Shown in pieces: positions 1,701 to 59,874 of a stretch of DNA of 64,000 bases. The notes under the pieces were generated by a model, which saw only the letters and a program-made list of their open reading frames with translations, was not told the DNA's origin and made no database searches. The DNA comes from Zygnema circumcarinatum SAG 698-1b (Eukaryota; Plantae; Zygnematophyceae). The stretch lies in contig CM074812.1 of assembly GCA_037447605.1 (NCBI GenBank), positions 2,108,001 through 2,172,000 of the forward strand, in the 5' to 3' direction. Positions within the stretch are counted from its first letter, which is position 1. Every line of letters begins with the position of its first letter. A program made the position numbers and the translations under genes.

Positions 1701-5455
<3,755 letters not shown>

Positions 5456-19850: not shown

Positions 19851-24809
<4,959 letters not shown>

Positions 24810-26677: not shown

Positions 26678-29600
26678 ATGAGTCATCCGCCGCCCGCCGC
26701 TGAAGAAGGAACAAAGAAGAAGTACCTCCCTCTGTATGGAACGCTCGCGAGCAGCGCCATCGCCACGTGCTGGGCGGAGGTTCGTTCCCCCTTTTTTTTT
26801 TTTCGGTTTTTGAGTTTTTGGGGTATTGGGTTTTCAGAATTTATAGAGTTTGAAGGGTTTAAGAGTTTTAGGGTTTCAACTTTTTAGGTTTTTATATGGG
26901 TTTTGAGGGGCAGAGTCTTCCTGGGGTTCAGGGACTGAACGAGTCTCTCTGAACCTCCTCTTTCTTTCTGTCTTTCTTTCCTTCCTTACCTCTTCCTGTG
27001 ACCCATTCTCCCACCCTGCCTCTTCCGCCTCTCCTTCCCTCCTTCCTCTCTCCCCCTCTCTCCTTCATTACCCGCTGCCCTCTCTCTCGCTGTCGTATTC
27101 CCCCCCCCCCTTACCCTTCGTCTCTGCCCCCTCCCCTCTTTACCCTTCTTCCCCGCTTCACTCTCACCCTTTCTCCCCTCTCCCCCCACCCTCAACCTTC
27201 TTCTTCCTCCACCACCCCCCACCCCCCTTCACCTATCTTCCCCCCCCCCCCCCCTTACCCTTCTTCCTTCTCCCCCCCTCACCCTCACCCTCTCCCCCCT
27301 CCCCTCCCCTCCCTCACCCTCTCTCCCCACCCTCCTATTACCCTCCCCCCCCGCCCTACTCTTCTTCCTTCTCCCTCCCCTCACCCTCTCTTCCCCCCCC
27401 CTTTACCCACTCCCCTCTTTCTTCCCCCCCCCTCCCCCCCCCTACCCTCCTTCTCCCTCCCCCTCACCCTCTCTCCCCTTTCCCTCCCCCCCCCTTCACC
27501 CTCCTTCCTTCTTCCCCTTTCACACCCTCTCTCCCTCTCCCTCTCCCCTTCCCCTCCTCCCCCCCACCCCTATCCTCCTTTTCTCCTGCCTCCCCTCACT
27601 CCTCTCCCCTCCCTCCCTCTCCCCCTCTTTTACCCTCCTTCCTTCTCCTCCCTCACTCCTCCTCCCCCCTAACCTCCCTCTCCCCTCCCTCCCTCCCCAA
27701 AGTTCTGCACCTCCCCATCGATACCGCCATGTCCGCCTTCGCTGCAGGGGCCGCGGGTAAGGGGCCCGCCCAAGGCCAAGTAAGGGCGTCGATGGGACCT
27801 CGCGGCGGTGGCGAGGGAGGAGGGGCCGACCGCGCTCTGGAGGGGACTCGAGGCGGGACTGCACCGACAGTGCCTCTTCGGGGGACTCAGGATAGGACTC
27901 TACGACCCGGTCAGAGGGGCAAAACCCTAAAAACCCTAGAAACTCTAAAACCCTAAAACCCTAGAAACCACCGACAGTGCCTCTTCGGGGGACTGAGGAT
28001 AGGACTCTATGACCCGGTCAGAGGGGCAAAACCCTAAAAAACCCTAGGAACTCTAAACCCCTAAAACCCTGGAAACCACCGACAGTGCCTCTTCGGGGGA
28101 CTGAGGATAGGACTCTACGACCCGGTCAGAGGGGCAAAACCCTAAAAACCCTAGAAACTCTAAAACCCTAAAACCCTAGAAACCACCGACAGTGCCTCTT
28201 CGGGGGACTGAGGATAGGACTCTATGACCCGGTCAGAGGGGCAAAACCCTAAAAACCCTAGAAACTCTAAAACCCTAAAACCCTAGAAACCACCGACAGT
28301 GCCTCTTCGGGGGACTGAGGATAGGACTCTATGACCCGGTCAGAGGGGCAAAACCCTAAAAACCCTAGAAACTCTAAAACCCTAAAACCCTAGAAACCAC
28401 CGACAGTGCCTCTTCGGGGGACTGAGGATAGGACTCTATGACCCGGTCAGAGGGGCAAAACCCTAAAAACCCTAGAAACTCTAAAACCCTAAAACCCTAG
28501 AAACCACCGACAGTGCCTCTTCGGGGGACTGAGGATAGGACTCTATGACCCGGTCAGAGGGGCAAAACCCTAAAAACCCTAGAACTCTAAAACCCTAAAA
28601 CCCTAGAAACCACCGACAGTGCCTCTTCGGGGGACTGAGGATAGGACTCTATGACCCGGTCAGAGGGGCAAAACCCTAAAACCTTTAAAACCCTAAAACC
28701 CTAAAACCCTAGAAACCACCGACAGTGCCTCTTCGGGGGACTCAGGATAGGACTCTACGACCCGGTCAGAGGGGCAAAACCCTAAAAACCCTAGAAACTC
28801 TAAAACCCTAAAGCCCTAGAAACCACCGACAGTGCCTCTTCGGGGGACTCAGGATAGGACTCTATGACCCGGTCAGAGGGGCAAAACCCTAAAACATTTA
28901 AAACCCTAAAACCCTAAAACCCTAGAAACCACCGACAGTGCCTCTTCGGGGGACTCAGGATAGGACTCTACGACCCGGTCAGAGGGGCAAAACCCTAACA
29001 AACCCTAAAACCCTAAACCCTAAATCCCTAGAAACCACCGGCAGTGCCTCTTTGGGGGACTGAGGATCGGACTCTACGACCCGGTCAGAGGGGCAAAACC
29101 CTAAAACCTTTAAAACCCTAAAACCCTAAAACCCTAGAAACCACCGACAGTGCCTCTTCGGGGGACTGAGGATAGGACTCTACGACCCGGTCAGAGGGGC
29201 AAAACCCTAAAAACCCTAGAAACTCTAAAACCCTAAAACCCTAGAAACCACCGACAGTGCCTCTTCGGGGGACTGAGGATAGGACTCTATGACCCGGTCA
29301 GTGGGGCAAAACCCTAAAAACCCTAGAAACTCTAAAACCCTAAAACCCTAGAAACCACCGACAGTGCCTCTTCGGGGGACTGAGGATAGGACTCTATGAC
29401 CCGGTCAGAGGGGCAAAACCCTAAAAACCCTAGAAACTCTAAAACCCTAAAACCCTAGAAACCACCGACAGTGCCTCTTCGGGGGACTGAGGATAGGACT
29501 CTACGACCCGGTCAGAGGGGCAAAACCCTAAAACCCTAGAAACTCTAAAACCCTAAAACCCTAGAAACCACCGACAGTGCCTCTTCGGGGGACTGAGGAT

Positions 29601-32600
29601 AGGACTCTATGACCCGGTCAGAGGGGCAAAACCCTAAAACCTTAGAAACCCTAAAACCCTAAAACCCTAGAAACCACCGACAGTGCCTCTTCGGGGGACT
29701 GAGGATAGGACTCTATGACCCGGTCAGAGGGGCAAAACCCTAAAAACCCTAGAAACTCTAAAACCCTAAAACCCTAGAAACCACCGACAGTGCCTCTTCG
29801 GGGGACTGAGGATAGGACTCTACGACCCGGTCAGAGGGGCAAAACCCTAAAAACCCTAGAAACTCTAAAACCCTAAAACCCTAGAAACCACCGACAGTGC
29901 CTCTTCGGGGGACTGAGGATAGGACTCTATGACCCGGTCAGAGGGGCAAAACCCTAAAAACCCTAGAAACTCTAAAACCCTAAAACCCTAGAAACCACCG
30001 ACAGTGCCTCTTCGGGGGACTGAGGATAGGACTCTATGACCCGGTCAGAGGGGCAAAACCCTAAAACCCTTTAAAACCCTAAAACCCTAAAACCCTAGAA
30101 ACCACCGACAGTGCCTCTTCGGGGGACTCAGGATAGGACTCTACGACCCGGTCAGAGGGGCAAAACCCTAAAAACCCTAGAAACTCTAAAACCCTAAAGC
30201 CCTAGAAACCACCGACAGTGCCTCTTCGGGGGACTCAGGATAGGACTCTATGACCCGGTCAGAGGGGCAAAACCCTAAAACCTTTAAAACCCTAAAACCC
30301 TAAAACCCTAGAAACCACCGACAGTGCCTCTTCGGGGGACTCAGGATAGGACTCTACGACCCGGTCAGAGGGGCAAAACCCTAACAAACCCTAAAACCCT
30401 AAACCCTAAATCCCTAGAAACCACCGGCAGTGCCTCTTTGGGGGACTGAGGATCGGACTCTACGACCCGGTCAGAGGGGCAAAACCCTAAAACCTTTAAA
30501 ACCCTAAAACCCTAAAACCCTAGAAACCACCGACAGTGCCTCTTCGGGGGACTGAGGATAGGACTCTAAGACCCGGTCAGAGGGGCAAAACCCTAAAACC
30601 CTAGAAACTCTAAAACCCTAAAACCCTAGAAACCACCGAACAGTGCCTCTTCGGGGGACTGAGGATAGGACTCTATGACCCGGTCAGAGGGGCAAAACCC
30701 TAAAAACCCTAGAAACTCTAAAACCCTAAAACCCTAGAAACCACCGACAGTGCCTCTTCGGGGGACTGAGGATAGGACTCTATGACCCGGTCAGAGGGGC
30801 AAAACCCTAAAACCCTAGAAACTCTAAAACCCTAAAACCCTAGAAACCACCGACAGTGCCTCTTCGGGGGACTGAGGATAGGACTCTACGACCCGGTCAG
30901 AGGGGCAAAACCCTAAAAACCCTAGAAACTCTAAAACCCTAAAACCCTAGAAACCACCGACAGTGCCTCTTCGGGGGACTGAGGATAGGACTCTATGACC
31001 CGGTCAGAGGGGCAAAACCCTAAAACCTTTAAAACCCTAAAACCCTAAAACCCTAGAAACCACCGACAGTGCCTCTTCGGGGGACTCAGGATAGGACTCT
31101 ACGACCCGGTCAGAGGGGCAAAACCCTAAAACCCTAAAACCCTAAACCCTAAAAGCCCTAGAAACCACCGGCAGTGCCTCTTCGGGGGACTGAGGATAGG
31201 ACTCTACGACCCGGTCAGAGGGGCAAAACCCTAAAACCTTTAAAACCCTAAAACCCTAAAACCCTAGAAACCACCGACAGTGCCTCTTCGGGGGACTGAG
31301 GATAGGACTCTACGACCCGGTCAGAGGGGCAAAACCCTAACAAACCCTAAAACCCCAAAACCCCAGAAACCACCCACCGGGCCCCCTCGGGGGACCGGCG
31401 ATCGGGCTCTACGACCCGGCCGACAGGGCAAACCCCCAAAACCCTTTGAAACTCTAAAACCCTAAAACCCTAGAAACCACCGACAGTGCCTCTTCGGGGG
31501 ACTGAGGATAGGACTCTACGACCCGGTCAGAGGGGCAAAACCCTAAAAACCCTAGAAACTCTAAAACCCTAAAACCCTAGAAACCACCGACAGTGCCTCT
31601 TCGGGGGACTGAGGATAGGACTCTACGACCCGGTCAGAGGGGCAAAACCCTAAAAACCCTAGAAACTCTAAAACCCTAAAACCTTGGAAACCACCGACAG
31701 TGCCTCTTCGGGGGACTGAGGATAGGACTCTACGACCCGGTCAGAGGGGCAAAACCCTAAAAACCCTAGAAACTCTAAAACCCTAAAACCTTGGAAACCA
31801 CCGACAGTGCCTCTTCGGGGGACTCAGGATAGGACTCTACGACCCGGTCAGAGGGGCAAAACCCTAAAACACCCTAAAACCCTAAAAACACGGAACATCT
31901 AGAAAACCCTAAGACCCTAAAAACACGGCAAACCTGAAAAACTCTAAAACCCTAAAACCCTAAAACCCTAAAGACACGGCAAACCTAAAAAAACCCTAAA
32001 AACCCTAATAACCCTAAAACCCTTAAAAACCCTAAGAACACTAACTGCTGGAACAAGGTTGAAACATCTGCAATGGAAGTCTGAAAACATTAAACCATAG
32101 AAAAATAAAGTAAAATTTCGCTGAAAGCTCGCTACTCAGCGGTGGGGGGGTGAAGGGGAGGGTTTGTTATTAGGAGAGGGAAAGGAAGAGGGAGGGAGGT
32201 GTGGAGGGTAGAGAGAGGGAATACAAAGGAGAGGGGTAGAGAGAGGGAGAGGGCTTGTAAGGTCTTTAGCGGTTTTAGGATTTTGAGGGTTTTAGATCCA
32301 AACTTGATTTGATTCGGATTAATTTGCGCCAATTTTAGTGTTGTTAATTCCAATTATTTTAGTTTTTTTCGCTTGCAGGTGAAGAGCTTCTATGTGGGCA
32401 AAGACCACGAGGGCGAAGTACCGCTTCTGAAAAAGATTGCCGCCGCGATGACCACTGGTAGGCATCCGCACAGGAAGGCGTTGACTTTCTTGACTCGGCT
32501 TGACTTCCTTCACTCAGATTGATTTTCTTGACCCAGATTGACTTTTTTGACCCGGTCTGACTTTCTTGACTCAGATTGACTTCCTAGATTGCCTTTCTTG

Positions 32601-33918
32601 GCCCAGATTGACTCTCTAGGTTGACTTCCTTGACTCAGATTGCCTTCCTTGTCCCAAATTGAATTCCTTGACCCTGATTGACTTTATTGACTCGGATTGA
32701 CTTAACTCAGATTGTCTTCCTTGACTCTGATTGACTTCCTTGACTCGGCTTGGTTTTCTTGACTCAGATTGACTTTCTTGGTTTGGAACTGACTGGAACG
32801 TGTGATTTGAAACTGGTGACTTGGGCTGAAAACTGGAAACTAAGAAAACTGAAATTGAAACTGAAACAAAAACTAAAACTGAAACTGAAACTGAAACTAA
32901 CCTGAAACTGAAACTTAAACTCAAACTCAAACTCAAACTCAAACTCAAACTCAAACTCAAACTCAAACTCAAACTCAACCTCAAACTCAAACTCAAACTT
33001 AAGCTGAAACCGAAACCGAAACTGTCCTGAAACTGTCCTGAAACTCAAACTCAAACTGGAACTGCAACTGCAACTGAAACTAGAACCGAAACTGTCCCAA
33101 AACTGGATCTGGAACTGGAACTGGAACTGGAACTGGAACTGGAACTGGAACTGGAACTGGAACTGCCACTGAAACTGAAACTGAGAGCCACGTGGCATGT
33201 GTCCGCAGGCGCCATCGGCATCGCGATCGCGAATCCGACGGACCTCGTTAAAGTGCGCCTCCAGGCGGCGGCGGGGACCGGGGGAGGCGGGACCGGGGGA
33301 GGGGCTATGCAGGCCTACGCCAGGATCTATAGGCAGGTAGGTACGCGGGCAGGCAGGGCGGGCAGGGGGGGCGGGCAGGGGGCAGAATTGGAAAAAAAAA
33401 GTTACGATTAAACTATTTTGAATTTGGGGAAATTTTGAAAGTGAATATCACTACGTTTGGAAGTTGGGGGAAATTTGGGGAATTTGAAAGTGAATGATAG
33501 TACATGAGGTGAATAATAGTACTACGTGTGGAAGTTTACAGCATGACTTCAAAAAACGCATCATTTTTTTTCTTTTCTTAATTTTTTGTATTATCACTTG
33601 TGGGTCTATAGAGACACAGATTTGGCAAAAGGAAGTCGTTTTTTTTTTTTTTTTTTTTTTTTTGGTGGCAATGGAAAACTTTTATTTTTTCTTTTTGGGG
33701 TAGTTTGAAAACGATCAACACCATATCCATCTGTTGACTTAGATCCTGAAATTTTTCCTTTCCTCATGTTTTTTTTCTCCTGCCCGTGGGTTCGGGCAGG
33801 AAGGCCTGGCTGCCCTTTGGACCGGAGTGGGGCCAAATATCGCTCGAAATGCAATCATTAATGCAGCGGAACTGGCCAGTTACGATCAGATCAAGGAGGT
33901 GAGCTGGCAGTCTCTCCC

Positions 33919-33952
<34 letters not shown>

Positions 33953-34884
33953 CTCGCACTCTCTCCGTCTCTCCCTCTTCCTCTTCCCCTTCCGACCTCC
34001 TTCCCTCTCTCTTTGTGTGTCTCTCTCTCTCCCTCTCCCCAACCCTCTCTCCCTCCTAACTGAGCGCCTCTCCTTCTCTCTCACCCTTTCTCTCCCTTCC
34101 CCACTCCCTCACTCCCCCCTTCCCCCTCTCTGTGTCCCTCTCTCTCCCTCTCTCCCTCCCTCTCTCCCTCCTAACAAAAACCTCTCCCTTTCTCTCTCGC
34201 ACTCTCGCCCTCTCCCCCTCTCCCCCTCCCTCTCTCCCTCCTAACCACAAACCTCTCCCTCTCTCTCTCTCTCACTCTCTCCCTCTCCCCCTCCCTCTCT
34301 CCCTCCTAACCACAAACCTCTCCCTCTCTCTCTCTCACTCTCCCCCTCTCCCCCTCCCTCCCACCTTCCTAACTATGAACCTCCCTCTCTCGCACTGCCC
34401 CCTCCACCTCTCCCTCCCTCTCACCCTCCAACTAAGAACCTCTCTCTCGTGCACTCTCCCTCTCTCCCCTCTCTCTCCCCTTTCTCCTCTCCTCCCTTCT
34501 CTCCCCTTTCTCCCCTTCTCCTCCCTCTCCCCTCTCCCCTTCTCCCTCTCTTCTCCTCTTTTCCTCCCTTCCCTTCTTCTCCCTTTCTCCTCATCACCTC
34601 TCTCCCCCCTCTTCTCTCCTCTTCTCCCTACTCCTTTCTCCCCCACTCCCTTTCTCTCTTCTTCCTTCTCTTCCTTTTCTTTCTTTCCTCTCTCCCTCTC
34701 CCTTCCTATCTGATTTAGCGTTTCCTTCTCAATTCTTTCTTCTTTTCTTCTTTCTTTCTTCTCTCTCTCTCTCCCGCAGTCTCTCCTCTCCCTCCCCGGC
34801 TTCCAGGACAACGTGGCGACCCATCTCCTGTCCGGTCTCGGCGCCGGTTTTGTCGCCGTCTGCGTCGGCTCCCCCGTCGATGTG
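26678..34884 (+). CDS. UCP1: Mitochondrial uncoupling protein (UCP/PUMP, mitochondrial carrier family), 3' partial
   Basis: Exons 26678-26779, 27703-27909 (several 1-nt losses in its first half; ends [33 protein letters not shown]), 32379-32457 ([10 protein letters not shown]...KKIAAAMTT), 33209-33336 ([12 protein letters not shown]), 33800-33898 ([25 protein letters not shown]) and 34780-34884 ([17 protein letters not shown]). The remaining exons presumably fall in the N gap at 35214-35313. Confidence 0.9.
27862..31868 (+). repeat. ~107-bp tandem array, 38 units by my count: UCP exon-2 3' end (48 nt) + splice donor + telomere-like spacer
   Basis: Unit = caccgacagtgcctcttcgggggactSaggataggactctaYgacccg|gtcagaggggc + (aaaaccct)-variant spacer. 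The first unit is the real exon end. Confidence 0.97.
32480..33185. repeat. Compound minisatellite/microsatellite in UCP intron 3
   Basis: A ~18-bp ttgactttcttgactcaga-type repeat (32480-32780), followed by the hexamers aaactg, aaactc and gaactg. Confidence 0.85.
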
Positions 34885-34910: not shown

Positions 34911-35110
34911 GGGGTTTAGGGTTTTAGGTCTTTTGGGGTTTTAGGTCTTTTAGGGTATTAGGTCTTATAGGGTATTAGGTATTTAGGGTTTTAGGTCTTA
35001 TAGGGTATTAGGTCTTTTAGGGTTTTAGGTCTTTTCGGGTTTTAGGACTTTTCAGGTTTTAGGTCTTGTAGGGTTTTAGATCTTTTAGGGTTTTAGGTCT
35101 TTTAGGCCTT
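34911..35110. repeat. Telomere-like (ttttagggttttaggtc)n repeat after the UCP exon 6 donor
   Basis: Degenerate ~17-bp units. Confidence 0.8.
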
Positions 35111-35869
35111 TAGGATAAGCGGGAGGAAGGGAGAGACGAGAAGGGGTAGGGGGTAAGGGAGGGAGGCAGCTGGGGGTGGGAAGGCTTGGAAACTATGTGT
35201 GAAAGGTGGCAGGNNNNNNNNNNNNNNNNNNNNNNNNNNNNNNNNNNNNNNNNNNNNNNNNNNNNNNNNNNNNNNNNNNNNNNNNNNNNNNNNNNNNNNN
35301 NNNNNNNNNNNNNGCTCTTCGGGAGATATTTTTTTCTCCTTAGAGAAATTGGCTTCACCACATTATTTTTGTTTTTAAATCTTTAATAAAACGACATCTT
35401 TTCATTTCACCGATGTTCATCTATCGTGGTTTCTTCTACTCATTTTTTTTTTGAATTTAAATTTGCATTTGACTAACTCTCTGACTGACTGACCGACTGT
35501 TGGTATTTTATTAAAGGCAAAATTCGAATTGCTTTCATTTTCCACAATTTCCACAGCAAAAAAAAAAGCGAAATCGGTACCGAATTCAACTTCATATATC
35601 AATAGTAAAAAAATATTAAAAAAATTATTAACGTCTCGGGGGTACCCACTGCCTTATTAATCTCCTCCGGCCAAAAAATGTCATAGTCACTTAAAGAATA
35701 ATCAAATCCTCCAAACTAGAAAGAATACCTCCCACAGCCTCTACCTCTACAGAACTTTGCCTTGCCCGCTACTCATTTTACAAAAAGTATGTAAACTCCC
35801 AAACTGCATAGCTTCTAAAACTCGCCAAATTCCAACCGACCAAAGCCAAAAACCATCATCGTCATATCA

Positions 35870-36216
35870 CCCCTGAACCCAAAACCCTAGACCCTATACC
35901 CTATAGACCTCAGGGCCTGGACCCTGGACCCTAGGGCCTAGGGTCTAGGCCCCTATGCACTAGAACCTAGGCCCTATACCCTAGGCCATAGTCCATATAT
36001 ACTAGACCCGAGACCCTAGACCCTATGCCCTAGACCCTATGCCCTAGACCCTATACCCTATAGACCTCAGGGTCTGGACCCTAGGGCCTAGGGTCTAGGC
36101 CCTATGCCCTAGGCCGTAGACCATATATACTACACCCTCGACCCTAGACCCTATGCCCTAGACCCTAAGCCCTAAGCTCTAGGCCCTAGACCCTATCCCC
36201 TAAACCCTAAACCCTA
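35870..36216. repeat. Degenerate telomere-like heptamer array (ccctaga/ccctata/ccctaaa) abutting the MYB stop codon
   Basis: 7-bp periodic CCCTAnn units; the most canonical units are next to the gene. Confidence 0.8.
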
Positions 36217-38977
36217 ATGCATTTCTAGCGCTTGTGGGGAGAGCACGGAGCGAGCATTGTCTAGGATCCATGAGACCGCATCAAATCTTGGACTCGCCAA
36301 AAGCGCCGCCAAGTTCGGCGACTCCAAGGGCCGCCCATAGATGGGTTCGGGCGTGGCCAAGCTTCGGCCCAAGTCTGGAAGTCCCACATCGTTAGAGAAT
36401 TCGACGGCTCTCAAATAGGGTCGCTCCACCTTCACATACATTGGCTTATTGCTGTGACAGTTCCGTTGGCCGTTCCGTTGGACGGATTGGAGCTGAACTG
36501 CGGCGCCATGGAACGTGCTCGTGGCGGCGCCTCCTTCTTGGGAGGGAGAGGAGGTCTTTTTTGGGGTCTCCTCAGTCACAACTTTTCGGGGTTCATTTGA
36601 GATGTGGTGGTTTTCTTGCTCAGCTTCTCTCGACTGCGATTCTATGTCGTCGAGCGCAACGGGCGACTGAACAAGATACTGATCCATGGCCATGGAAACC
36701 TCCGGTCCAAGGAACAATGATTGCTGTTGACTCTGGTCAACAACAGGGAGCATGTGAAGGTGGCTATGGTGTGTTGATGAAGCCATGTGGGATGCATGAG
36801 GCATAGGAGAAATGAGCATACATGTGGGGTCGTTTAACGGAACGGAAACCTCGTCAACTGTGGAGACAGCCATGTCATGTAGCCAGGAAGTGTACGGACA
36901 TTCCTGTGTGACCAAATCCTGGGTGGAGTCTTCACTTGTGAACTGCCCCACAAAGTCAGGAGATCCATTTTCCCCTCCGAGCCCTGAACCCTGAATGGCC
37001 CCTTGACTGCACAATGTAGTGAACATGGGGTTCAGGGGACTCAGAGCGGTGATGTTCCGTGTTGCAGAAACTCCGTTAGGGTTTTCTCCCCCCTTCGTGA
37101 AGCAAGCAGCCATGAGATCTGAAGGCATACATTCCCTCAGAGCGGAGCACATTCCTGTGGGAGAAGCCAAAATCTGCTCCCACACTCTTCTTGCTTCTTG
37201 AAGATGTCTCTGCTTCCGAATTTCCGGCCCCTCCTCCTCCGCTAGCCGACAACGAAGGTTGACTTCTTGAGATTCTTGGAATGGAGCCATGGCTGCCACT
37301 GTAACTGCTTTCTCTCCCACTCTCGCAGTGACTACTCCTCCTGCTAATGCTGGGGGGGGGGCTTGGCAGCCATGGCTGATCGTAGCGGAAGCTTGTAAAG
37401 GGAGAGGCTCCGTCTTGCAGTTGACTAAAGGGGAGGGAGAGAGAGAGGGAGAGGGAGTGGGAGAGGACGAGGAGCCTCCGGGAGGCCGTACAGTCACCAT
37501 ACTTGAGCCGGTATCCATGACAGCCGCTTCAAAGTTAACAAAAGTTGTTGGACGGGCCCCATCATTTGACTCGCAAGTCATTGACTTTGAAGTACACACA
37601 GGTGTTCCTGCCACCCTTGTTGCTCTTTTCCATCGCTCCCTCTCTCTCTCCAAATCTCTCTCCCTCTCTCTCTTCTCCCTCTCCTTCCCACTCCCAATCT
37701 CCGTCGAGCAACCGAACGTCTCTGTCACACTCACGCTTCCTCCTCCTCCTCCTCCTCCTCTCCATCCTCCTCCCGCTTCTCTCTCTGATCTCTCTCTCTC
37801 TTCCTTCACCTGCCGCGGCCCCTCCCCACTGTGCACGCTCTGCCTCCGCATGGCTCGTTTTCTATGCGAATTCCAAAAATTCTTTATTGTGTTATCGGAT
37901 CTGCCCGGCAACATGGAAGCCATGAGAGCCCACTTGTTCCCATGAATGCTCTGCAGTTCGATCACCTTCCGCTGCTCTTCTTCTGTGAGAGGACCGCTCC
38001 GTATTGCGGGACTCAAATGCTTCACCCATCGCAGCCGACAGCTCTTACCGCTTCTGCAGAAACAGGAGGACGAAGAATGCGTTAGAACATAACTATGTAC
38101 ATGTAAATATGAATGTTAAGAAAAACTATAAAAATGAAAGCATGATTCGGAGAAGAAAGGAGGGGAGATAGAAGCACCTGTTGAGACCGCTTTTGAGTGC
38201 AATTGTGGACCAGTTTCCCTCCTTGAAGCGCTGCACGCACAGCGCAAGCACCGCATCCTCCTCCGCCGTCCACAGCCCCTGCTATTAAATAAAACCGTGA
38301 ACCGCTCTCTTAGAATGTATTAAGAAATGTCTCTCTCACTTTCCACCCCCTCCCTCTCCATTTTATCTCCCTCCCTCCCCCAACTCTCCACTCCTAACTT
38401 ACTCCCAGCCTTTTTCCCCTTCAGCTCTCTCTTCTCGCCGAGCCATCCCAAGCCCCTTCCTCCTTCTCTCCCCTAATGTCTTCCCCCTAGACTGTTCCTC
38501 TATCCCTTAGCCTCTACTCTCCTTCTCTCTTCATTTTGTACTCTTATCTCCCCTCTTGGCTTCAAACTCCCCCCCCTCACTCGTCCTCCCAACCTCTCCC
38601 TCTCGCTCTCTCTGTCTCTCTCACTCCCTGCCTCCATTCCTCTTCTCCCCTCTCCCTCCTCGCACTTCCCCTCCTCACTTCCTCCCTCCCTTCCTCTTCT
38701 CCCCTCTCCCTCCTCGCTCTCCCCCTCCTCTCTTCCTCCCTCCCTCCCTCCCTTCCTCTTCTCCCCTCTCCCTCCTCGCTCTCCCCCTTCTCTCTCCCTC
38801 CTTCCCTCCCTCCCTTCCTCCCCTCCCATCTCCCTCCTCACCCATACTCTATCTCCCACCCTCTCTCTCCCATCGAAACATCACATTTCTGCATGAGACA
38901 GAGAAGCAAAGTACCTTCTTGAGCTCGTCAGAGGCCCCTCCGCTGGCAGCCTCGCTCGTTTCTTGGGAGCTTTCCAT
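36214..38977 (-). CDS. R2R3-MYB transcription factor (GAMYB/DUO1-related)
   Basis: Exons 38915-38977, 38178-38278 and 36214-38053 give ...LKKGLWTAEEDAVL...[30 protein letters not shown]...VIELQSIHGNKWALMASMLPGRSDNTIKNFWNS, followed by a long low-complexity C-terminus. Confidence 0.9.
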
Positions 38978-39442: not shown

Positions 39443-42400
39443 GAGAGATAACGCACCCCGCATGGAATTCACTATTTGAATGAGTACGCTCGGGGCAAAA
39501 AAATAACTTTCCTCTCGAATAAAATTTCCTCACGATACGACCACAGAAAATTGGTACGAGGAGAGAGGGAGAGGAGGATAGGGAGGAGGAGAGAGATATG
39601 GATTGAGCGAGGGAAAGAGAGAGAGACAGAGGAAAATGGAGAGGGTGTGAGTTAGAGAGAGAAAGGGAGAAAGGGGCAGAGAGAGGGAGAGAGAGAATTA
39701 GGGATATGGAGAGAGGAGGAGAGAGCGGGAGAGAGGATTAGAATGAGGGAGAGAGGAGAGAGAGGGAGATAGGGAGGGATGGAGAGAGGGAGGGAGAGAG
39801 AGAGGGAGAGGTTGAGAGAGAGAATGTGATAGAGAGAGGGAGAGGGAGAGAGAGAGAGAGAATAAGGAAGAGAGAGGGTGAGAGAGAGCGGGAGAGAAAG
39901 AGGGAGAGAGAGAAAGGGGGATATTGAGGGAGGGGGAGAGAGAGGGAGAGAGTATTAGAAAAGGGGAGGGATGAGAGAGGGAGATAGAGAGGGAGGGAGA
40001 GAGAGGGAGAGAGAGAGGGAGAGAGAGAGAGAGCGGGGAGGCAGAGGAGCGCGGGCAGCGACCGGCGGGTTCGCGCTCTAAGGAGTGGACCGCCCATTGA
40101 CTTTTGGCCTCAGCTCGTCCGTACAGATTCGGACAACGAAAGTACCGGGGGCGGCGGGACCCACCGTCTGACGGAAGTACCGTACAGGTTTGTCGTTTAG
40201 GGACTTCCATAAGTCGCCGATTCTGTCGCATGGCCGCAAGACATTGGCTGACGACCGCGTCGCAGAGGTGTACGAGATCGCAGGGCGAACCGAAACTGGC
40301 GTACGGTCAGGGATGGATAATTTGAACCCAGAAAAAATCAGGCCGTTTAATAAAACGCTTTTTGGAACGATTGTACAATAGTACGGCCAAACGGTCGTAC
40401 GGCCTGCTTAGCGCCAATTGCCAATTGTACGACCGTACGTAACGTTCAATCCTAACGGTCGTACGTCCATTCAAGAAGAGTTTCAAAACTCTGGAACTTT
40501 CAGATATTAGAACATTCTAATTCTGAAATATAACTTTTTGCCTTTCCTATGTACGGTACGGTTATATGTGACAGAAAATGTACGTCTAACGACGAAATGT
40601 GTACGGAGATCGTCAGTTGCGGTCCGTCGGTCAACTGTCCGCGGCGGCGAGCGAACCGGCCGCGCTGCTGCGGTTACCGTCCGTCGGTTTGCTTCATACG
40701 GACAGTACTGTTTTTTTCTTTTTCGCAGATTTTTACATTTAACGGCACATATATGAGAGAGTGAATATTCACAAAAAGATTTTTTGAAGATACGGGGCAG
40801 GAAATCACTTTTTCCTGCACTAACCAATGGGGACATGACACGTGCATATTTGGATGACGTGGCGAGTTGTACTTGTACAATAGATGGATAGATTCGGAAT
40901 CGAAGAAATGTTCGCAGAGATTTGCTTCCGGAATAGGATCGGGAAATGGTCGGTGTCGATCCGTGAACTTGGGCTCCGTCAATGGAGTCCTCATGGATAT
41001 CAGTCTTAGTACCTGATGTTTAGAATCTCTCATCTGATTGGATGACATCAGTTGTGGATCCAGAATTCTACCCGGATCTACTCCCCGTTGATCCGTACTC
41101 ACTCGTATTCCGTACGATGCAGTTGGCGGGTGACACTTCCGATCACAGTGACGCCTTGGACATGACGTGACATGACGCTACGTGACGTGAGGTGACGTGA
41201 CGTATCTTCACTACGGTGCCAAACCGTCGTTAACTTCCCGAATCCTTTACCACAAATCAGCGTCTGCCACGTGGCATTGATTTTTACAGTAATTACGTCA
41301 GCATGTCGATTTTCTGTATTTTTGTGCGAGGATGATATTTAGGTCGCTCCAGAATTTTGACATATTCGTCCTCAAGTTCGAGCATAAAAATAATACATTG
41401 CAAGACGCCAAGTGTACTGAATGTATGTTCCTAGATGCTATGTACTTCGTTTGAACAAATATTTCATGAATAAAGTCAAAGGCACAATCTACGTATTAAA
41501 TTCAGACATGAATATGCTTCGCTACCGATACGACAAAACCTATTTCAATTATCACAGAAACGACAATAATTTGTCCTAAACATCCTGGCGATTCAGAGCT
41601 CTCCACGTGTAATGTTTTGTCGTTGTTAGTAAAATATCTACAAGCGTTGACTGGATTTTGACCGTCGTTCAGTTGCTCTTGTTTTGGCGACTCGTCCGGT
41701 TCTAAACGAATGGGCGTCGCCGCTTCATGCTGTTTCCTGCGACTGGTCGTGAACTGGAACTGATAATACCGGAACTGTCGAGCTTGACACATGTGTCGGC
41801 ACGGAGCGGTTCTGGTTGCGATCCTCCTCATCCAACGGCTCGGCATGTGCCACGTGGCACATTACTTTCACTTGATGATCGACGGCCTCAAATTCGCCAC
41901 GTCACCTTTTAAGAGGTCCATTCGACTGCCACGTTAGCAGGAGCCTCCACCAATCTGGACGTTTCACGTCACCCAAGTTGCTGTCGTGGCGGATGCCTAT
42001 TGGCTTTTGATCGCTTGGAGACAGGCGAATGGTTGTTGTGGACGGCTTGTGATTCTTGTTGCGTAGCGATGTAACCGTAAAAACCCTAAGGAAATCTTGA
42101 ATCTCGACCGTCGATATTCCAGTTGAGCAGCCTCAAACGCCAAGATAGCATGGATCCAACCCTCAAAAGCAAACTTAAAAGCAGGTGGAAACACTTTCCG
42201 GGCAGCGACCGACATTCGGCGTAACTATGCTATTTCTTCTCGAATCAGCTAAGAACTTTTAAAATAAAAGTCGTTTTTTCCGCGCCTGGCGACGCCCTCG
42301 TCAACCGGCTGCCAGGTCAGCGCAGCATATAGTGTGATTCGCTCGTAGATTCTGTGCAGCCACGTCAGCCCTAGGTACGGCCATCACTGCCGCGGGCCGC

Positions 42401-42544
42401 GCCGACAACGCGCTGCGTTCGAGGCCGCGCGGGGACGCGTCCGACGAAGAACACGACGAAGAAGACTGAAAGGACAAAAGTCGGAGTGACCCGCTCGCTC
42501 GCCGACAAAGTTCGACGACCATCAACTTCCAGTCTTGTCGCCAT

Positions 42545-42931
42545 TAGGGATGGCCCGCGTTATAAAGTCCAACTATATTATATACTTTACAACGGGTTTA
42601 AAAGTAGTAATATAGTACAAAGTAAAACACTTTATTACATATATTATACCCACTCGTTTTGAACAATTAACGACCGTACGACCGTACTCGTACGTTCGTA
42701 CGGTCGTACCATACCAAAATTAGGTCGTTTTGGCGTTGGCGTTGCGAAATGCGTCCGTCTGGTTCACTCTGTCTGCTCGTGCATCCGTACCGCATAATAC
42801 CGTACAGTCGTTCGACCGTACGACCGTACATGTTGTAAAGGCGTTGTAAATTAATATATATCAGCCGTTATCTAGTCGTCACAGTTGTATAATATAATAT
42901 ATAATATATAGTCGTAACTAATCCATCCCTA
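42545..42931. mobile_element. Possible non-autonomous hAT-like element (copy at about 44569-44956)
   Basis: Termini tagggatgg...ccatcccta (Ac/Ds-like TAGGGATG), AT-rich inverted subterminal arms and internal cgaccgta repeats. No 8-bp TSD found. Confidence 0.4.
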
Positions 42932-43060
42932 CTCACGATGGCGCGGCCATCCAACATACGTGGACAAAGTCAGCATGGGGAACCACGAGCTGGTCGCTAT
43001 CAATCACTAGTCAATCGACCTATTCAATCAGTGTCAATCAATCGCAAGTCTCCATCAATA

Positions 43061-43260
43061 GGGGGAGTCAGACCTTGACCATCGCCAAATCGATTTCGAA
43101 AGCCTGTCCGGCGAATTAAGTATTGGCTAGGTACGCATTTCGGTACGGCTGGGCTTGGCGGAGCCGCGGATCCCAACCCGGAACTCGTACACGAAAGAAG
43201 TGACTTTTAGTATAAGGAATTCGGGAATTTCGTAAGCGATTGTCAAGGTCTGACTCCCAC
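43061..43260. mobile_element. 200-bp MITE with TA target duplication (copy at 45086-45285)
   Basis: ~25-bp TIR g[g/t]gggagtcagaccttgac[c/a]atcgc with 2 mismatches, flanked by TA on both sides. Confidence 0.75.
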
Positions 43261-46200
43261 TAATTTTCTTGTCGCTATTGCTAATCGTGACGACTAGAAT
43301 TTGCAGACCGCACCTTTCCGCGTTGACCTAACTACAGTAACTGTACGGGGTCAAGCGTACGGTACGGCGCAGGCTTGGGCGTGGTACAAAGGCGCCCTCT
43401 CCCTCACTCTCACGCACCCACGCCTCTTTCTCGCTCCCTCTCCCTCTCGCCCTCTCACGCCCCTCTCTCTCTCTCTCTTACTCACTCACTTTCTCTCTCA
43501 CTTTCTTTCTTTCTGGGCCGGCACGCAATGTCCATCTCAATGACAGGTTCTGGGCCCGCGCTCGCACACAATACGTTAGAAAAGTTTGATGGGACTAATT
43601 GGCTCGACTGGAAATCGCAATGTCAGCGTTTTTTTGAGGAGGAGGAGCTTTGGTCCATAGTTAACGGTACAGAGAATACGCCTGCGCCACCTGCTGCCGA
43701 TGCTTGTACTGCAGCGGACATGGCCGCGTGGGAAAAGGAGATGGAGGCGTGGCTGACCCGCGACGAGAGGGCCTTAAGGTGCATCTCCCGCGCCATTCCC
43801 CGCAGTCAAGTTGGGCCCATTCGGGAGGCCGCATCCTCCCACGAGGCATGGNNNNNNNNNNGGCTCGGCATGTGCCACGTGGCACATTACTTTCACTTGA
43901 TGATCGACGGCCTCAAATTCGCCACGTCACCTTTTAAGAGGTCCATTCGACTGCCACGTTAGCAGGAGCCTCCACCAATCTGGACGTTTCACGTCACCCA
44001 AGTTGCTGTCGTGGCGGATGCCTATTGGCTTTTGATCGCTTGGAGACAGGCGAATGGTTGTTGTGGACGGCTTGTGATTCTTGTTGCGTAGCGATGTAAC
44101 CGTAAAAACCCTAAGGAAATCTTGAATCTCGACCGTCGATATTCCAGTTGAGCAGCCTCAAACGCCAAGATAGCATGGATCCAACCCTCAAAAGCAAACT
44201 TAAAAGCAGGTGGAAACACTTTCCGGGCAGCGACCGACATTCGGCGTAACTATGCTATTTCTTCTCGAATCAGCTAAGAACTTTTAAAATAAAAGTCGTT
44301 TTTTCCGCGCCTGGCGACGCCCTCGTCAACCGGCTGCCAGGTCAGCGCAGCATATAGTGTGATTCGCTCGTAGATTCTGTGCAGCCACGTCAGCCCTAGG
44401 TACGGCCATCACTGCCGCGGGCCGCGCCGACAACGCGCTGCGTTCGAGGCCGCGCGGGGACGCGTCCGACGAAGAACACGACGAAGAAGACTGAAAGGAC
44501 AAAAGTCGGAGTGACCCGCTCGCTCGCCGACAAAGTTCGACGACCATCAACTTCCAGTCTTGTCGCCATTAGGGATGGCCCGCGTTATAAAGTCCAACTA
44601 TATTATATACTTTACAACGGGTTTAAAAGTAGTAATATAGTACAAAGTAAAACACTTTATTACATATATTATACCCACTCGTTTTGAACAATTAACGACC
44701 GTACGACCGTACTCGTACGTTCGTACGGTCGTACCATACCAAAATTAGGTCGTTTTGGCGTTGGCGTTGCGAAATGCGTCCGTCTGGTTCACTCTGTCTG
44801 CTCGTGCATCCGTACCGCATAATACCGTACAGTCGTTCGACCGTACGACCGTACATGTTGTAAAGGCGTTGTAAATTAATATATATCAGCCGTTATCTAG
44901 TCGTCACAGTTGTATAATATAATATATAATATATAGTCGTAACTAATCCATCCCTACTCACGATGGCGCGGCCATCCAACATACGTGGACAAAGTCAGCA
45001 TGGGGAACCACGAGCTGGTCGCTATCAATCACTAGTCAATCGACCTATTCAATCAGTGTCAATCAATCGCAAGTCTCCATCAATAGGGGGAGTCAGACCT
45101 TGACCATCGCCAAATCGATTTCGAAAGCCTGTCCGGCGAATTAAGTATTGGCTAGGTACGCATTTCGGTACGGCTGGGCTTGGCGGAGCCGCGGATCCCA
45201 ACCCGGAACTCGTACACGAAAGAAGTGACTTTTAGTATAAGGAATTCGGGAATTTCGTAAGCGATTGTCAAGGTCTGACTCCCACTAATTTTCTTGTCGC
45301 TATTGCTAATCGTGACGACTAGAGAATTTGCAGACCGCACCTTTCCGCGTTGACCTAACTACAGTAACTGTACGGGGTCAAGCGTACGGTACGGCGCAGG
45401 CTTGGGCGTGGTACAAAGGCGCCCTCTCCCTCACTCTCACGCACCCACGCCTCTTTCTCGCTCCCTCTCCCTCTCGCCCTCTCACGCCCCTCTCTCTCTC
45501 TCTCTTACTCACTCACTTTCTCTCTCACTTTCTTTCTTTCTGGGCCGGCACGCAATGTCCATCTCAATGACAGGTTCTGGGCCCGCGCTCGCACACAATA
45601 CGTTAGAAAAGTTTGATGGGACTAATTGGCTCGACTGGAAATCGCAATGTCAGCGTTTTTTTGAGGAGGAGGAGCTTTGGTCCATAGTTAACGGTACAGA
45701 GAATACGCCTGCGCCACCTGCTGCCGATGCTTGTACTGCAGCGGACATGGCCGCGTGGGAAAAGGAGATGGAGGCGTGGCTGACCCGCGACGAGAGGGCC
45801 TTAAGGTGCATCTCCCGCGCCATTCCCCGCAGTCAAGTTGGGCCCATTCGGGAGGCCGCATCCTCCCACGAGGCATGGCATCTTCTCGCCTAGAGTTACG
45901 AGTCTCAGAGTTTGTCTCAGAAGCGTCGAAGTTGGCGAGCCTACACCGACTGCATGAAGGACCCTTCTGAAACCATAATTGACTATGTTGGTCGCATCAA
46001 AGCGCAGAGCATAGACTATGGGGTCCGTGATGATGAGACTATTTGGACTCTTTTGAGCGGCTTGCCAGAATCTTCCCAGCCGTTCATCTTGTCCATGGGT
46101 TCTCCCTCAGATTCACTTATCGTCACTGAGTTGATCGACCTTTTGGTGGAAAAAGAAAAGCGTCTGGTGGAAGAAGGAGAGGAAACCGGGACTGTCAAGC

Positions 46201-46776
46201 ATGGCATCATGCGCGGCATTTCGAAAATCATCGACTTTGGCTGCATGGCGGGAGCAAGTTTTGCTATTGCCTTTCATATAAAGGACTGGGTTGTAGCGCA
46301 TTTGGACCTAAATAACCGCGGCGCCTCCATACCTATCTACATACTTCAAGTCCTCTCCACGCTTCTCTTTTTATTCTCATTCATTCGCTTCTACGTCTGC
46401 GTGTTAAAGCCTGAGAAAAAAGCCGATTGGGACATGTTTTCTGAACACCACGACGAAAAGGAGCTTCAATCCACTCTGAACCTCGTTTTGGGACTGGCCT
46501 CTAAAATCACCTCCGCTCTCTTTGGGTTCACGGAATACGTCGGAGATTTTCCTTTGTTGTTCGCAAACGCACAGCTTGTGACGCTTCAAAGCTGCATGAC
46601 CTTGCTGCTGGTGGTCATCTGCGAGTTGGACTTGGCCAATATGCTGAACGCGGCGGCTGCGGGTATAGGCTACGTGGCGTACCTCCTCTCCACTTCCGAG
46701 AAGCTGAGAAAATATGACGCCTTGGGGAGGAATTGTAACGAACGGTATACATGGAGTGTATGACCTAGTACTTACA

Positions 46777-46851
46777 TCCGCGGTTGCCTTTTAATGGTAA
46801 AGCACTTAGGTGGATACCGGGAGGTCTTGAGTTCAAACCTTGTTGGAGGCG
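46777..46851 (+). other. tRNA-derived Pol III promoter-like segment inside the TRIM LTR (second copy 59204-59278)
   Basis: A-box/D-arm-like tgccttttaatggtaaagca, variable-loop-like aggtc, and B-box/T-arm gagttcaaacc at tRNA spacing. Stems are imperfect, so this is not a functional tRNA. Confidence 0.7.
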
Positions 46852-48083
46852 GGTTTGTTACATTGGTATCAGAGCCAAGGACTGGTATTTGCAATCCACC
46901 CTAAAAACACCGTGATCTCTGAGCATGGTACGGTTGGCCAGAGGGTGTGAACTGTACATACTGCCATGTGTTAAAGGAGCTTGAACGCGCTCGTGAAAAC
47001 CCTTGGGCATGGTGCTGGGGGCGAGCCGGTTTAGTGGGGAGGAATGCCAGCGAGCATACATGGGTGTATGACCTAGTCTAACTACTTGTTAGTGCGAGGG
47101 GGCTCACTCCATTTCTTTGCCGTCAGTTCCTCGTTGGGTCACCCTCCCGTGAGTTAAGCGTTCAATCGGCGATGACATCTTCAAATCCCTGCTTCACTCA
47201 TAGCCCATTTTACTCGCGAGTGAATCCGCGGCAATAATACGGCGGAATGAGAGAAATGAATAGGAAGCTCACGGCTCTAAAACTCATGTAGGTAATTCAC
47301 TTTCGTACATTGAGACCCCCCTCTCCGTCGGCCGCAAGTAATCTCACGACTCACTTACCTCACGGCCTGGCGAGTAAGTGTAGTGTACTTAACCTGGCAG
47401 GGCAGCATACTTGAGACTACTACGGCTGAATGAATTGTTACCCGCGCAACAAAAGCTAATCGCCAAATGCTTATGTCCTTGCACACGTGACAACAACATC
47501 ACTCACAGACTAACAACATCGACTAGCGGCCTGCAAGGGCCCTCCCTATCCCGATCCTAATCCTGCGCCGTCGGATCATAAATAGACTCCACGGATCCAG
47601 CCTTTTAAACTTCGTCGGATCCGGCTTCGACCTTCCGGATTCGATCAGCGTCTTTAGCGCGTGGGATCTGACCCGCCTCCAAGATGTGGCGTGTAATCCT
47701 GCAGCGTCGTCTCGCGCCACCCCGACAATTGACGCAGCTCCATTACAGTTGTTCCTGAATCAGCGCCGACAATTTGGCGCCGCGTATCGCGTCAGTCCGT
47801 CGGCCAATCAAAGGTTGGCGGCAGCGCTGCGTTAGTTTTTGGTCAGCTGGCGCGCAGTTTACGTCACGTCCACATCTTCAATTAAGCTCAGCGGCGCGTC
47901 GCGCATCCGTCCCCGATTCGTCGCGTCAGCGCCCTCGTCCGCCAGCTCCGCCCGGCGCCCATCTCCCAGCGACCAAAGTCCATTACCTCCAGCGGGTCGG
48001 TCTATTTTATAAGCCAAGGGAGCCACACACACCTAACCTGCGCACACAAAACCCCAATGTCCCAACAACAACTTGTCTAGTGA

Positions 48084-51000
48084 CTAACTACTATACACTA
48101 ACAATCCCCCTCTTTGGGACTTTAGTTTTGCATGGGCCAGCCCAACCAACCTGCCATTCACCAGCAGGGTTTCTCCGCTAACTCCTTTCGTCAGCAGCAT
48201 ATCGGCGGCTTGCTCCTTCGTACCTACGAACTTCACATCGATCAAACCCTCCTCGACCAACTCCCGTACATAATGGTACTGCACTCTGATGTGCTTGGTC
48301 AGCTTAATGAAACACGGGTTTCCCACCAGAGCTGTCCCGATGAAGGAATTGATTATGGTGAACAAGGTAGTAGGAAGGTTGTTCTCTCTTGCATTCATCA
48401 AAATTTCTTGGAACGCCAGCCCTCCTTTCATGACACTTGACAAGCACCCATGTGCACAACCCTTTGTACTTTCGATAGCGCTACGAGGTCCACCCGCAGC
48501 TTGGGAGCTCCAAATGTCCACCTCCCCATATAGGTAAATGAAACCTGAAGTCGAGCGCGATGTATCTACATCACCGCCCCAATCTGAGTCTGTATAGCCA
48601 ATCACCCTGGTTGGCCCCCTCTTGTACCTGATCCCATAATCAAGCGTCCCTCTCACATATCTGAATATCCTCTTCACGGCCTCCCAATGCTCGAGGCCCG
48701 GATTTTCCATGAATCGGCTGGCCGAGCTCACTGCTTTCGCCAGATCCGGACGCGTTCCAATCATCAGGTACATCATACTCCTATTCGCAGACCTGTAAGG
48801 CACTCCGAACATCTTCTGCGCCTCTGCTGCACTCGAAGGTGACATCTCCTTCGACAATCTAGCACCTATCTCCATCGGGCTGGAGCACGTCCTAGAATCT
48901 TCCATGTGGAACCGGGCAAGAACATCCGATGCATACTTCTTCTGACACAAGAATAAGCTGCCATCCTGCCCCCTCTTCAGCTGCATCCCAAGCAGATACT
49001 GCGCCTCCCCCAAATCTGACATCTTGAAATTCGCTTGAAGCAACTCTTTCAAGGAACTGATTCTTTCAAGCGAGAGGCTCACCATTATGAGATCATCAAC
49101 GTAGATCCCGACGGACATGATGTCCGCCCCCTCTCCTTGACGGTACACGGAATGATCTATTTCGAATCGGTCGAAACCATTCCTCCTCAGAAGATCATCT
49201 ATCTTCTCGTACCACACTCTGGGCGCCTGCTTCAAACCATATAGGCTCTTCACTAGTCGACAGACTAGGTGTTCCTTTCCTGGGACCACCTTCCCCTCCG
49301 GCTGCTCCATATAGATCTCTTCCGTTAGATCTCCGTACAGGAATGCCGTCTTGATGTCCAGCTGATGGACATGCATTCCTTCAGCCGCTGCGATGGAAAT
49401 CAAGGCTCTCAAGGAGTTGAACTTTACCACTGGAGCGAAAGTCTCCACGTAGTCAACTCCATACTTCTGGGCGTATCCCTTCGCCACTAGCCGCGCCTTG
49501 TATCTGTCCACGCTTCCGTCTGCCTTCCTCTTGACTTTGAAGACCCATTTGCAGCCAATAGCTCGCCTCCCTTGAGGCAGCTTCTCCAACCTCCACGTGC
49601 CGTTCTCTATCAAGCTGTCCCACTCGCTATCGATCGCCACCCGCCATTTGTCGCCATCGACTCCGTCGTGTGCTTCCTCAAAGGTCTGTGGTTCCGTGAT
49701 CATAAAGCAATGGGCAACTCCCACAAGGTCAGCTGAATCTGAAGGCACTCTTTCATGGATAAGGTTGTTCTCAGGCGAATACCGATCTGGTCGCCTCCTG
49801 TCCCGACTGCTCTTCCGAACCTCCTTCGCGCTTCGTCCTCTCGGATAGAAGTAGAGTCCGGGTACAAAACCTGGAGGCATGTTAGCTAACATAGCCTCTC
49901 TCTCGGCCGCTTCAAGGTCCTCAGACTCTTGCGTGTGCAGCGGCACCGTCTCCACGGAGTTCTCCTCTTCCTCACTCAACTGAGTGTGCACTGGAATCGT
50001 CTCCGTCGAATTCTGCGGCTCCTCCGCATGCGCCTCTTCTGGCGACTCTCCAACATCAACAGGCTTCGCTTGGCGCGGCTCTTTGTTTCAAACTCCCTTC
50101 ACTCTACGTGATGTCTTTGGCATCACCTTTGACATCCGCTCTCACTCGTCTCTCCTCCTCATACGATGCAAAATCCACTTTATTTGGAGGAAAGATGCGA
50201 GAGTCTGCAACACGTTGACAACACTCCCCTCATCCATGTCCCTCGTGCCAGCGGGACTTCCTGGCGGTCGGGGTTCCACCTATGCGATAGGCTGTTGGTG
50301 TTATAGCCGAGAACATAACCCTCCACCGCTCGGGGGTCAAACTTCTTCTTCTGTCGCGCCTTGGGCAGTGCAGCCCAGCATCGCGCGCCAAAGGTCCTCA
50401 GGTGGGAAACTGTGGGCTTCCTCCCACTCCACATCTGCTCAAGGACCTGGTCTTTCAGAACAGAAGACGGACATCTGTTCCTAATGTAAGCAGCCGTAGA
50501 AACTGCTTCTCCCCAAAAGGAAGCCGGAAAGGGGGAATCAATCAACATGGTCCGAGCCATGTCCCCCAATGTCCGATTCACTCGCTTAGCTGCTCCATTG
50601 CTCACGAGGGGAATAGAGGCGAGAATTCATGCATATACGCTGGTTCTTGGGAACCCTCACGAACTCCGCCGATTTGAATTAAGCGCCGTTATTAGAAGCA
50701 TGAAGCCTTGACCTGTCTTGATTCTGTCTCCGCCTGGTCAGCCAATCTCGAAAGGCTCCGAAAGCCTCTGACTTGTTCTTGAGGAGCGTAATCCAAATCT
50801 TCCTCGAGTAATCGTCGAGGAACGTGACGAAGTAACGTGCTCCGCCGTTGGTCGCCGGTGTAACTGGGCCACACAAGTCAGAATGTACCAATTCCAACTT
50901 CTCTCGCGCTCGATAGGACTCGTCTCCACTCCTCACGAATGGTCTCCTGTGCGCCTTGCCCTCCACACACTCCTGGCACAACCCAAGCTCCTTCTCCACT

Positions 51001-52485: not shown

Positions 52486-52661
52486 GCTCTGATACCACTT
52501 GTTGGTGTAGGGACTCCTCCACTGCTGCCGTCCGTTCCTCCATTCGGGTCACCCTCCATCGGAGTTCGCGTTCCACTCGACGATGACATCTTCAAATCCC
52601 TCACATTCACTCATAGCCCATTTTACTCACAGAGTGAATCACAACAATAATNNNNNNNNNN

Positions 52662-59849: not shown

Positions 59850-59874
<25 letters not shown>

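What the first reader, a model, noticed from the sequence alone, without database searches (positions are those of the whole stretch)
27862..31868. Intronic array of ~37 spare exon ends in which every recurrent variant is synonymous
Seen: each ~107-bp unit repeats the last 16 codons of UCP exon 2 ([16 protein letters not shown]), the GTCAG donor and a telomere-like spacer. The five sites that vary in two or more units are CGA/CGG (Arg), TTC/TTT (Phe), CTC/CTG (Leu), ATA/ATC (Ile) and TAC/TAT (Tyr). All are silent, although these copies should be non-coding. Non-silent changes occur only as singletons (TAA near 30566, +A near 30640, one garbled unit near 31371). If about a quarter of random changes were silent, 5 of 5 would be roughly a 1-in-1000 event; two of the sites are CpG transitions, which weakens this. 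Inference: the array is either (a) exchanging sequence with the live exon by gene conversion or unequal crossover and so is filtered by protein-level selection, (b) a record of earlier or allelic versions of the exon, or (c) translated through alternative splicing.
Basis: partly seen in the sequence, partly recalled or inferred. Interest (0 to 1): 0.88.

Follow-up and report, generated by a model that had tools for sequence, protein, structure and literature searches.

The report
Intronic exon-end copies under protein selection
An algal uncoupling-protein gene carries 37 untranslated copies of one exon's last 16 codons inside the next intron, and these copies vary only at silent positions, most likely because they swap DNA with the working exon and so feel its selection second-hand.

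Summary
Observation confirmed. 27862-31846 holds 38 units of about 107 bp: 48 nt of UCP exon-2 end, the donor, and a telomere-like spacer. All five recurrent exon variants are silent (P about 0.001; CpG does not explain it), while the spacer varies freely. Contigs of four public runs from four studies show the head-to-tail junction and the C/T variant. One shows the four-variant unit exactly, so the variants are not assembly noise. Copy number and unit order are unverified. The mRNA contig uses the first donor, carries the unit-1 haplotype and joins exon 3; read-through stops at codon 7, so translation of the copies is rejected. The anatomy is known (human F7, LMNB2, CBS donor minisatellites). 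The scan noted six other donor arrays in this genome, none with a silent bias in the notes I saw. Toy simulations: an isolated array or one clonal lineage almost never gives 5:0 (at most 0.4%). Exchange with the live exon plus mixing between genomes gives it in 25-83% of cases. The mechanism is inferred from one locus and five sites.

The parts
26678..26779 (+). UCP coding exon 1 (ATG to phase-0 donor)
   Evidence: sequence; boundary inferred from homology and GT
27703..27909 (+). UCP exon 2; 5' half mis-assembled (indels versus mRNA contig); last 48 nt = unit 1 of the array
   Evidence: tblastn to plant UCPs; RNA-like contigs X7, X20 cover 27761-27911
27862..27909 (+). Live exon end, 16 codons, haplotype CGA-TTC-CTC-ATA-TAC; 12 of 16 residues are kept in 83-100% of 105 relatives
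   Evidence: Mito_carr and best PDB hits UCP2/UCP1
27910..27968 (+). Authentic donor (GTCAGA) plus first telomere-like spacer; first 20 nt carry no recurrent variant in any unit; in-frame stop at 27928
27969..31846 (+). 37 intronic copies of exon end + donor, separated by 51-60 bp spacers
   Evidence: head-to-tail joint seen in all four runs
28717..29141 (+). Four-unit block (units 9-12), ends with the four-silent-variant unit 12 (29036-29083)
   Evidence: junction 11-12 matches X20 record 2 exactly
30103..30527 (+). Second copy of the four-unit block (units 22-25), 1 mismatch in 425 bp
30567..30569 (+). Singleton TAA in unit 26 (probably real, see report)
31371..31418 (+). Garbled unit 34, probably unpolished long-read sequence
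   Evidence: inference
31847..32378 (+). Remainder of intron 2 (original intron tail, telomere-like repeats, acceptor)
32379..32457 (+). UCP exon 3, joined to unit 1 in the mRNA contigs
   Evidence: loose end at 27911 in X7 and X20 equals exon 3 start
33209..33336 (+). UCP exon 4
33800..33898 (+). UCP exon 5
34780..34884 (+). UCP exon 6; later exons are lost in the N gap at 35214-35313

Best explanation
This is a donor-spanning minisatellite whose exon part is tethered to the live exon by concerted evolution. SHOWN: the array exists in independent DNA data; the first donor is the one seen joined to exon 3; the copies cannot be translated; recurrent variation in the copied codons is silent only. 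INFERRED: slippage or unequal exchange duplicated the exon-end/donor/spacer unit. Units keep exchanging sequence, sometimes with unit 1. A chromosome whose array carries amino-acid-changing copies keeps producing broken UCP alleles and is selected against, and good copies flow out of unit 1. Silent variants are free, and out-of-register exchange between genomes in sexual cycles mixes silent haplotypes of different alleles into one array. Splicing ignores the 37 extra donors by taking the most upstream one, as in human F7. The array needs no function of its own.
For: Silent-only pattern P about 0.001, robust to CpG, and the spacer does vary. Signs of exchange inside the 48 nt: all four combinations of 27888 and 27903, and unit 32 carries only the first of the linked variants. 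Unit 1 differs from interior units 9 and 22 by one base in 107. The first 20 intron bases, the part that includes the live donor, also lack recurrent variants (P=0.017). A unit with four linked silent differences is real. Toy population models with two-way exchange plus mixing give silent fraction 0.71-0.96, P(no non-silent given 4-6 recurrent)=0.25-0.83 and 0.1-1.4 non-silent singletons, as observed. No paralogue contig accounts for the variants (depth sums).
Against: One locus, five sites, picked post hoc from many arrays. No direct observation of a conversion of unit 1 and no second strain known to differ. Terminal units of minisatellites usually exchange less (own knowledge), and a tenfold edge effect drops P to 0.05. 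Only 6 of 37 copies equal the live exon end (0.16) against model means of 0.33-0.64. Models are rescaled toys (N=1000) with unknown real rates; the frequency of sex in this organism is unknown.
Confidence: 0.55

Rival explanations
1. One-way record: the copies were made from coding templates (earlier or allelic states of the live exon, or a lost paralogue) and have not had time to decay; nothing flows back, so there is no selection on the array itself.
For: Four linked silent differences in 16 codons look like a coding donor. Models in which unit 1 donates 10-30% of conversions and never receives give silent fraction 0.74-0.83 and P=0.26-0.39.
Against: Needs a strong donor bias; unbiased donate-only gives P=0.04. 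No gradient toward unit 1: units 2-8 all differ from it. No paralogue contig at 80% likeness in four runs (contigs can miss things).
Confidence: 0.2
2. Chance: a neutral minisatellite whose five recurrent variants happen to be silent, noticed because of that among many arrays.
For: At least six other donor arrays are noted in this genome without such a bias being mentioned (unchecked notes). Only five sites. If the three linked changes were one event P rises to 0.014.
Against: P about 0.001; 0 of 169 and 0 of 98 matched samples in isolated or neutral simulations; counting three changes as one event already presumes a coding donor.
Confidence: 0.15
3. Assembly or polishing artefact: collapsed alleles, paralogues or misplaced short reads created the array or its variants.
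For: Local assembly is rough: indels in exon 2, garbled unit 34, duplicated contig ends at gaps. No long read spanning the array was seen.
Against: Head-to-tail joint in all four runs of four studies; C/T at 27903 in all four; the rare unit with its spacer reproduced letter count for letter count in X20. Variants sit on contigs that include the spacer, so they are array units, not mRNA or paralogue reads. Polishing can shuffle unit order but not invent these haplotypes.
Confidence: 0.06
4. The copies are translated through alternative or recursive splicing and are under direct selection.
For: Every copy keeps an intact donor; array sequence is present in RNA-like runs at low depth (may be DNA or pre-mRNA).
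Against: Stop at codon 7 of the read-through; no AG|GT or AG|GC site; an acceptor in a spacer would delete the first 53 or so codons of exon 2. One exon-3-joined contig per run, with the unit-1 haplotype. A probable real stop codon in unit 26.
Confidence: 0.04

Closest known systems
Human donor-spanning minisatellites: F7 IVS7 (37 bp), LMNB2 (100 bp x 10-15), PDGF intron 4 (81 bp x 16-18), CBS IVS13, interferon-inducible 6-16 (PMC1557585)
   Same: First unit spans the exon-intron boundary, the donor is repeated exactly in the intron, and the most upstream donor is used (F7, LMNB2, PDGF).
   Different: More units (38), a longer coding part per unit than F7 (48 nt versus 4 nt), a telomere-like spacer, an algal gene; and a silent-only variation pattern that I found no report of (library incomplete).
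Concerted evolution with selection between a gene and non-functional copies (Fawcett and Innan 2011, PMC3924837; fog-2/ftr-1 repair, disease alleles from pseudogenes)
   Same: Gene conversion carries variants between a working sequence and copies, and selection acts through the exchange.
   Different: Here the copies are 48-nt exon fragments inside the gene's own intron, 37 of them, and the signature is purifying rather than diversifying.
Silent-cassette donors (immunoglobulin pseudogenes, MHC, R-gene clusters)
   Same: Untranslated copies that retain coding quality because they exchange with an expressed locus.
   Different: No amino-acid diversity is stored; the target is a highly conserved carrier helix; no sign of programmed conversion.
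Plant mitochondrial uncoupling proteins UCP1/UCP2 (PUMP), SLC25
   Same: Exons 2-6 are collinear with poplar UCP2-type and grass UCP, 56-88% identity.
   Different: Nothing unusual in the protein except a Gly-rich loop in exon 4.

Membership tests
Donor-spanning minisatellite (F7/LMNB2 type) | Tandem repeat whose first unit spans the exon-intron boundary | tested here: met
   mRNA leaves the genome at 27909
Donor-spanning minisatellite (F7/LMNB2 type) | Donor sequence repeated identically downstream | tested here: met
   GTCAGA in 36 of 38 units; unit 14 GTCAGT, unit 34 garbled
Donor-spanning minisatellite (F7/LMNB2 type) | Most upstream donor used in mRNA | tested here: met
   X20 record 1 unbroken from exon 2 into exon 3; contigs may drop rare isoforms
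Donor-spanning minisatellite (F7/LMNB2 type) | Copy number polymorphic between individuals (VNTR) | not testable with these tools
   only short-read contigs with coded sample names
Donor-spanning minisatellite (F7/LMNB2 type) | Downstream donors become active when the first is mutated | not testable with these tools
   needs a minigene
Copies under concerted evolution with a selected gene | Exchange among copies | tested here: met
   four-gamete pair, partial haplotype in unit 32, block duplication; recurrent CpG change or polishing could mimic part of it
Copies under concerted evolution with a selected gene | Exchange involving the expressed copy | tested here: inconclusive
   unit 1 within one base of units 9 and 22; direction and recency not shown
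Copies under concerted evolution with a selected gene | Deficit of non-silent variants in the copies | tested here: met
Intron gain by tandem duplication (AG|GT proto-splice model) | Duplicated unit holds AG|GT so that donor of one copy and acceptor of another restore the reading frame | tested here: not met
   no AGGT or AGGC in any exon haplotype; the intron position is shared with plant UCPs
Alternatively spliced cassette array | Each copy has its own acceptor and gives an in-frame product seen in mRNA | tested here: not met
Plant UCP (SLC25) | Mito_carr repeats, closest solved relatives UCP1/2, collinear exons | tested here: met
   last exons missing in the gap

The most novel reading that the evidence does not exclude
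In this alga, exon-end minisatellites are a genome-wide class of untranslated sequence held to the genetic code by recombination with their own exon: they store silent alleles of the population, can overwrite or repair the live exon end, and give a direct read-out of second-order selection on a non-coding repeat.
Probability: 0.3. Interest if true: 0.72.

Novelty: new variant of a known kind. Interest (0 to 1): 0.5.

Why it matters
If right, non-coding repeat copies can show a clean coding signature (no amino-acid change among common variants) without ever being translated. That is a caution for using silent-site bias as proof of translation, and a natural test bed for theory on selection acting through gene conversion: the ratio of silent to non-silent variants measures exchange rate times population size. 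The genome seems to hold many exon-end arrays, so the test can be pooled. It also extends first-donor selection among identical 5' splice sites from mammals to a plant-lineage alga, with 38 sites.

Tried and rejected
CpG hypermutability: rejected. Translation of copies: rejected. Simple single-lineage filtering: insufficient. Pseudogene reading of exon 2 from its frameshifts: rejected, the mRNA contig differs from the assembly by indels and two substitutions and joins this exon 3. Paralogue donor: no contig found; no further copy of the 48 nt in the window. Finding this organism's own UCP or the neighbouring MYB protein in the protein collection, to fetch the locus from other strains: blank (length limits make blanks weak). 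Junction motif in metagenome contigs: 0 hits. Literature searches for the silent-bias pattern: nothing. Zhuo et al. 2007 on introns from tandem arrays was not held. The organism was not identified (names coded).
Full report
Observation. Splitting on the donor motif gives 38 units from 27862 to 31846, each 48 nt of exon end plus a 51-60 bp spacer that starts with the donor and is built from telomere-like AAAACCCT words. Five exon positions vary in two or more clean units and all five are silent. The three non-silent oddities are single units (26, 27, 34). Haplotypes at the five sites: ACGAT 15, ACGAC 9, ACCAC 7 (units 1, 9, 11, 22, 24, 31, 38), ACCAT 2, GTGCC 2, GCGAC 1, plus unit 26 with the stop.

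More than chance. 35 of 144 possible single changes are silent, so P=0.0008, or 0.0013 given the transition/transversion mix. Of eight possible CpG transitions only three are silent, so CpG does not explain the two CpG sites. The units are old enough to vary: about nine recurrent substitutions in the 59-bp spacer against none at 36 non-silent sites (P=0.011; the spacer count is my conservative reading of an ambiguous alignment). The first 20 intron bases also lack recurrent variants (P=0.017). Caveat: five sites, one locus, chosen after the fact.

The gene. Exons 2-6 match Mito_carr and align in order with plant UCP1/UCP2. Twelve of the 16 copied residues are kept in 83-100% of 105 relatives, so the live exon end is strongly constrained. 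The last exons fall in the gap at 35214. The organism is coded. Earlier notes call it a streptophyte alga. A Zygnema assembly made by nanopore, Racon, Pilon and HiRise (PMC11096116) would fit the error pattern, but I did not test that identity.

Independent reads (contigs only, four runs, four studies, stretch 27670-27968). All four runs hold the joint from the end of the spacer back to the start of the unit, and all four show C/T at 27903. X20 record 2 (136 letters; 6 and 4 mismatches, 18 letters between, A>C at 27894 listed) equals the junction of units 11-12 or 24-25 exactly and no other junction, so the four-variant unit is real. In DNA run X6 the array arms are 400-490 deep against 22-53 for unrelated contigs. 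This is compatible with tens of copies, but the tool warns that depth is no copy number. A third X6 arm (2 mismatches, depth 33) is most simply unit 26 with its TAA; the tool did not list that letter, so this is probable only. Copy number and unit order remain unverified, and short-read polishing may have shuffled units.

The mRNA. X20 record 1 (1287 nt) runs unbroken over 27761-27911 and continues with the start of exon 3 (32379); X7 shows the same loose end. One such contig is listed per run. It differs from the assembly only in the 5' half of exon 2 (indels, two listed substitutions), which I read as assembly error. Its haplotype is that of unit 1: 27867 and 27879 are seen directly, 27888 follows because the mRNA contig and the array contig overlap without merging, 27903 follows from equal mismatch counts in X7 and X20, and 27894 is assumed. 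So the live haplotype is a minority type in the array (6 of 37 copies). Contig depths over 27880-27899 add up without room for a paralogue. Runs X7 and X20 are RNA by guess only.

Not translated. Reading past donor 1 meets a stop at 27928; no haplotype contains AGGT or AGGC, so no internal splice can swap a copy in seamlessly. Option (c) fails.

Mechanism. Toy simulations (48 sites, 12 silent, 38 units) asked how often 4-6 recurrent variants are all silent. Neutral or isolated arrays: 0. One clonal lineage with a protected unit 1: 0.003-0.004. Clonal population: 0.02-0.08. Unit 1 donating only: 0.04 unbiased, 0.26-0.39 with strong donor bias. Two-way exchange plus out-of-register exchange between genomes: 0.25-0.83, with 0.1-1.4 non-silent singletons, falling to 0.05 if unit 1 exchanges ten times less. 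The reason: within one lineage new array mutations are three-quarters non-silent whatever happens at unit 1. Silent-only diversity needs fast turnover relative to mutation and an outside supply of silent haplotypes, that is other alleles. The sequence shows exchange inside the exon part and near identity of unit 1 with units 9 and 22, but no gradient toward unit 1. The models are rescaled and show sufficiency only; they overshoot the share of copies identical to the live exon.

Comparison. Minisatellites whose first unit spans a 5' splice site are known in human F7, LMNB2, PDGF, CBS and 6-16, and the first donor wins by scanning (PMC1557585). This array meets the testable features of that class. 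Selection acting through conversion between genes and non-functional copies is established theory (PMC3924837). First readers noted six other donor arrays and one acceptor array in this genome (unchecked), so the anatomy is a habit of this genome.

Limits. The joined spliced protein was not searched. No second strain could be shown. Verdict: real, new variant of a known kind, interest 0.5; a pooled test over the other arrays decides whether it deserves more.

Noticed in passing
window 27703-27800: Assembled 5' half of UCP exon 2 has frameshifts and a stop; the mRNA contigs differ there by indels and substitutions, so it is probably assembly error. Both DNA runs showed no contig over 27670-27859.
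   Followed up: partly
window 59852-61087 versus 61098-62359; 41837-43851 versus 43862-45878: Stretches of 1.2-2 kb are repeated directly on both sides of 10-N gaps: likely duplicated contig ends.
   Followed up: partly
window 35214-35313: 100-N gap cuts off the last exons of the UCP gene.
   Followed up: no
window 27910-27929 and each unit: First 20 intron bases have no recurrent variant while positions 21-59 have about nine (P=0.017): possible tethering of the live donor region too.
   Followed up: partly
window 20756-23866: 3.1-kb (AG)n tract inside a minus-strand gene with a VHS/TOM1-like N-terminus (name from memory), interrupted by an exon near 22550-22760.
   Followed up: no
window 36214-38950 (-): MYB-like gene with a long C-terminal exon; no relative found for residues 60-600 (length limits apply).
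   Followed up: partly
window 3807-4197, 26800-26900, 31850-32030, 34915-35114, 62480-62630: Telomere-like words (TTAGGG/TTTAGGG variants) are common in introns and intergenic DNA; they probably seed the repeat instability.
   Followed up: no
window 43530-57700: Copia-like and gypsy-like retrotransposon pieces, some degraded; earlier notes s1-555093 and s1-555104 cover this area.
   Followed up: no
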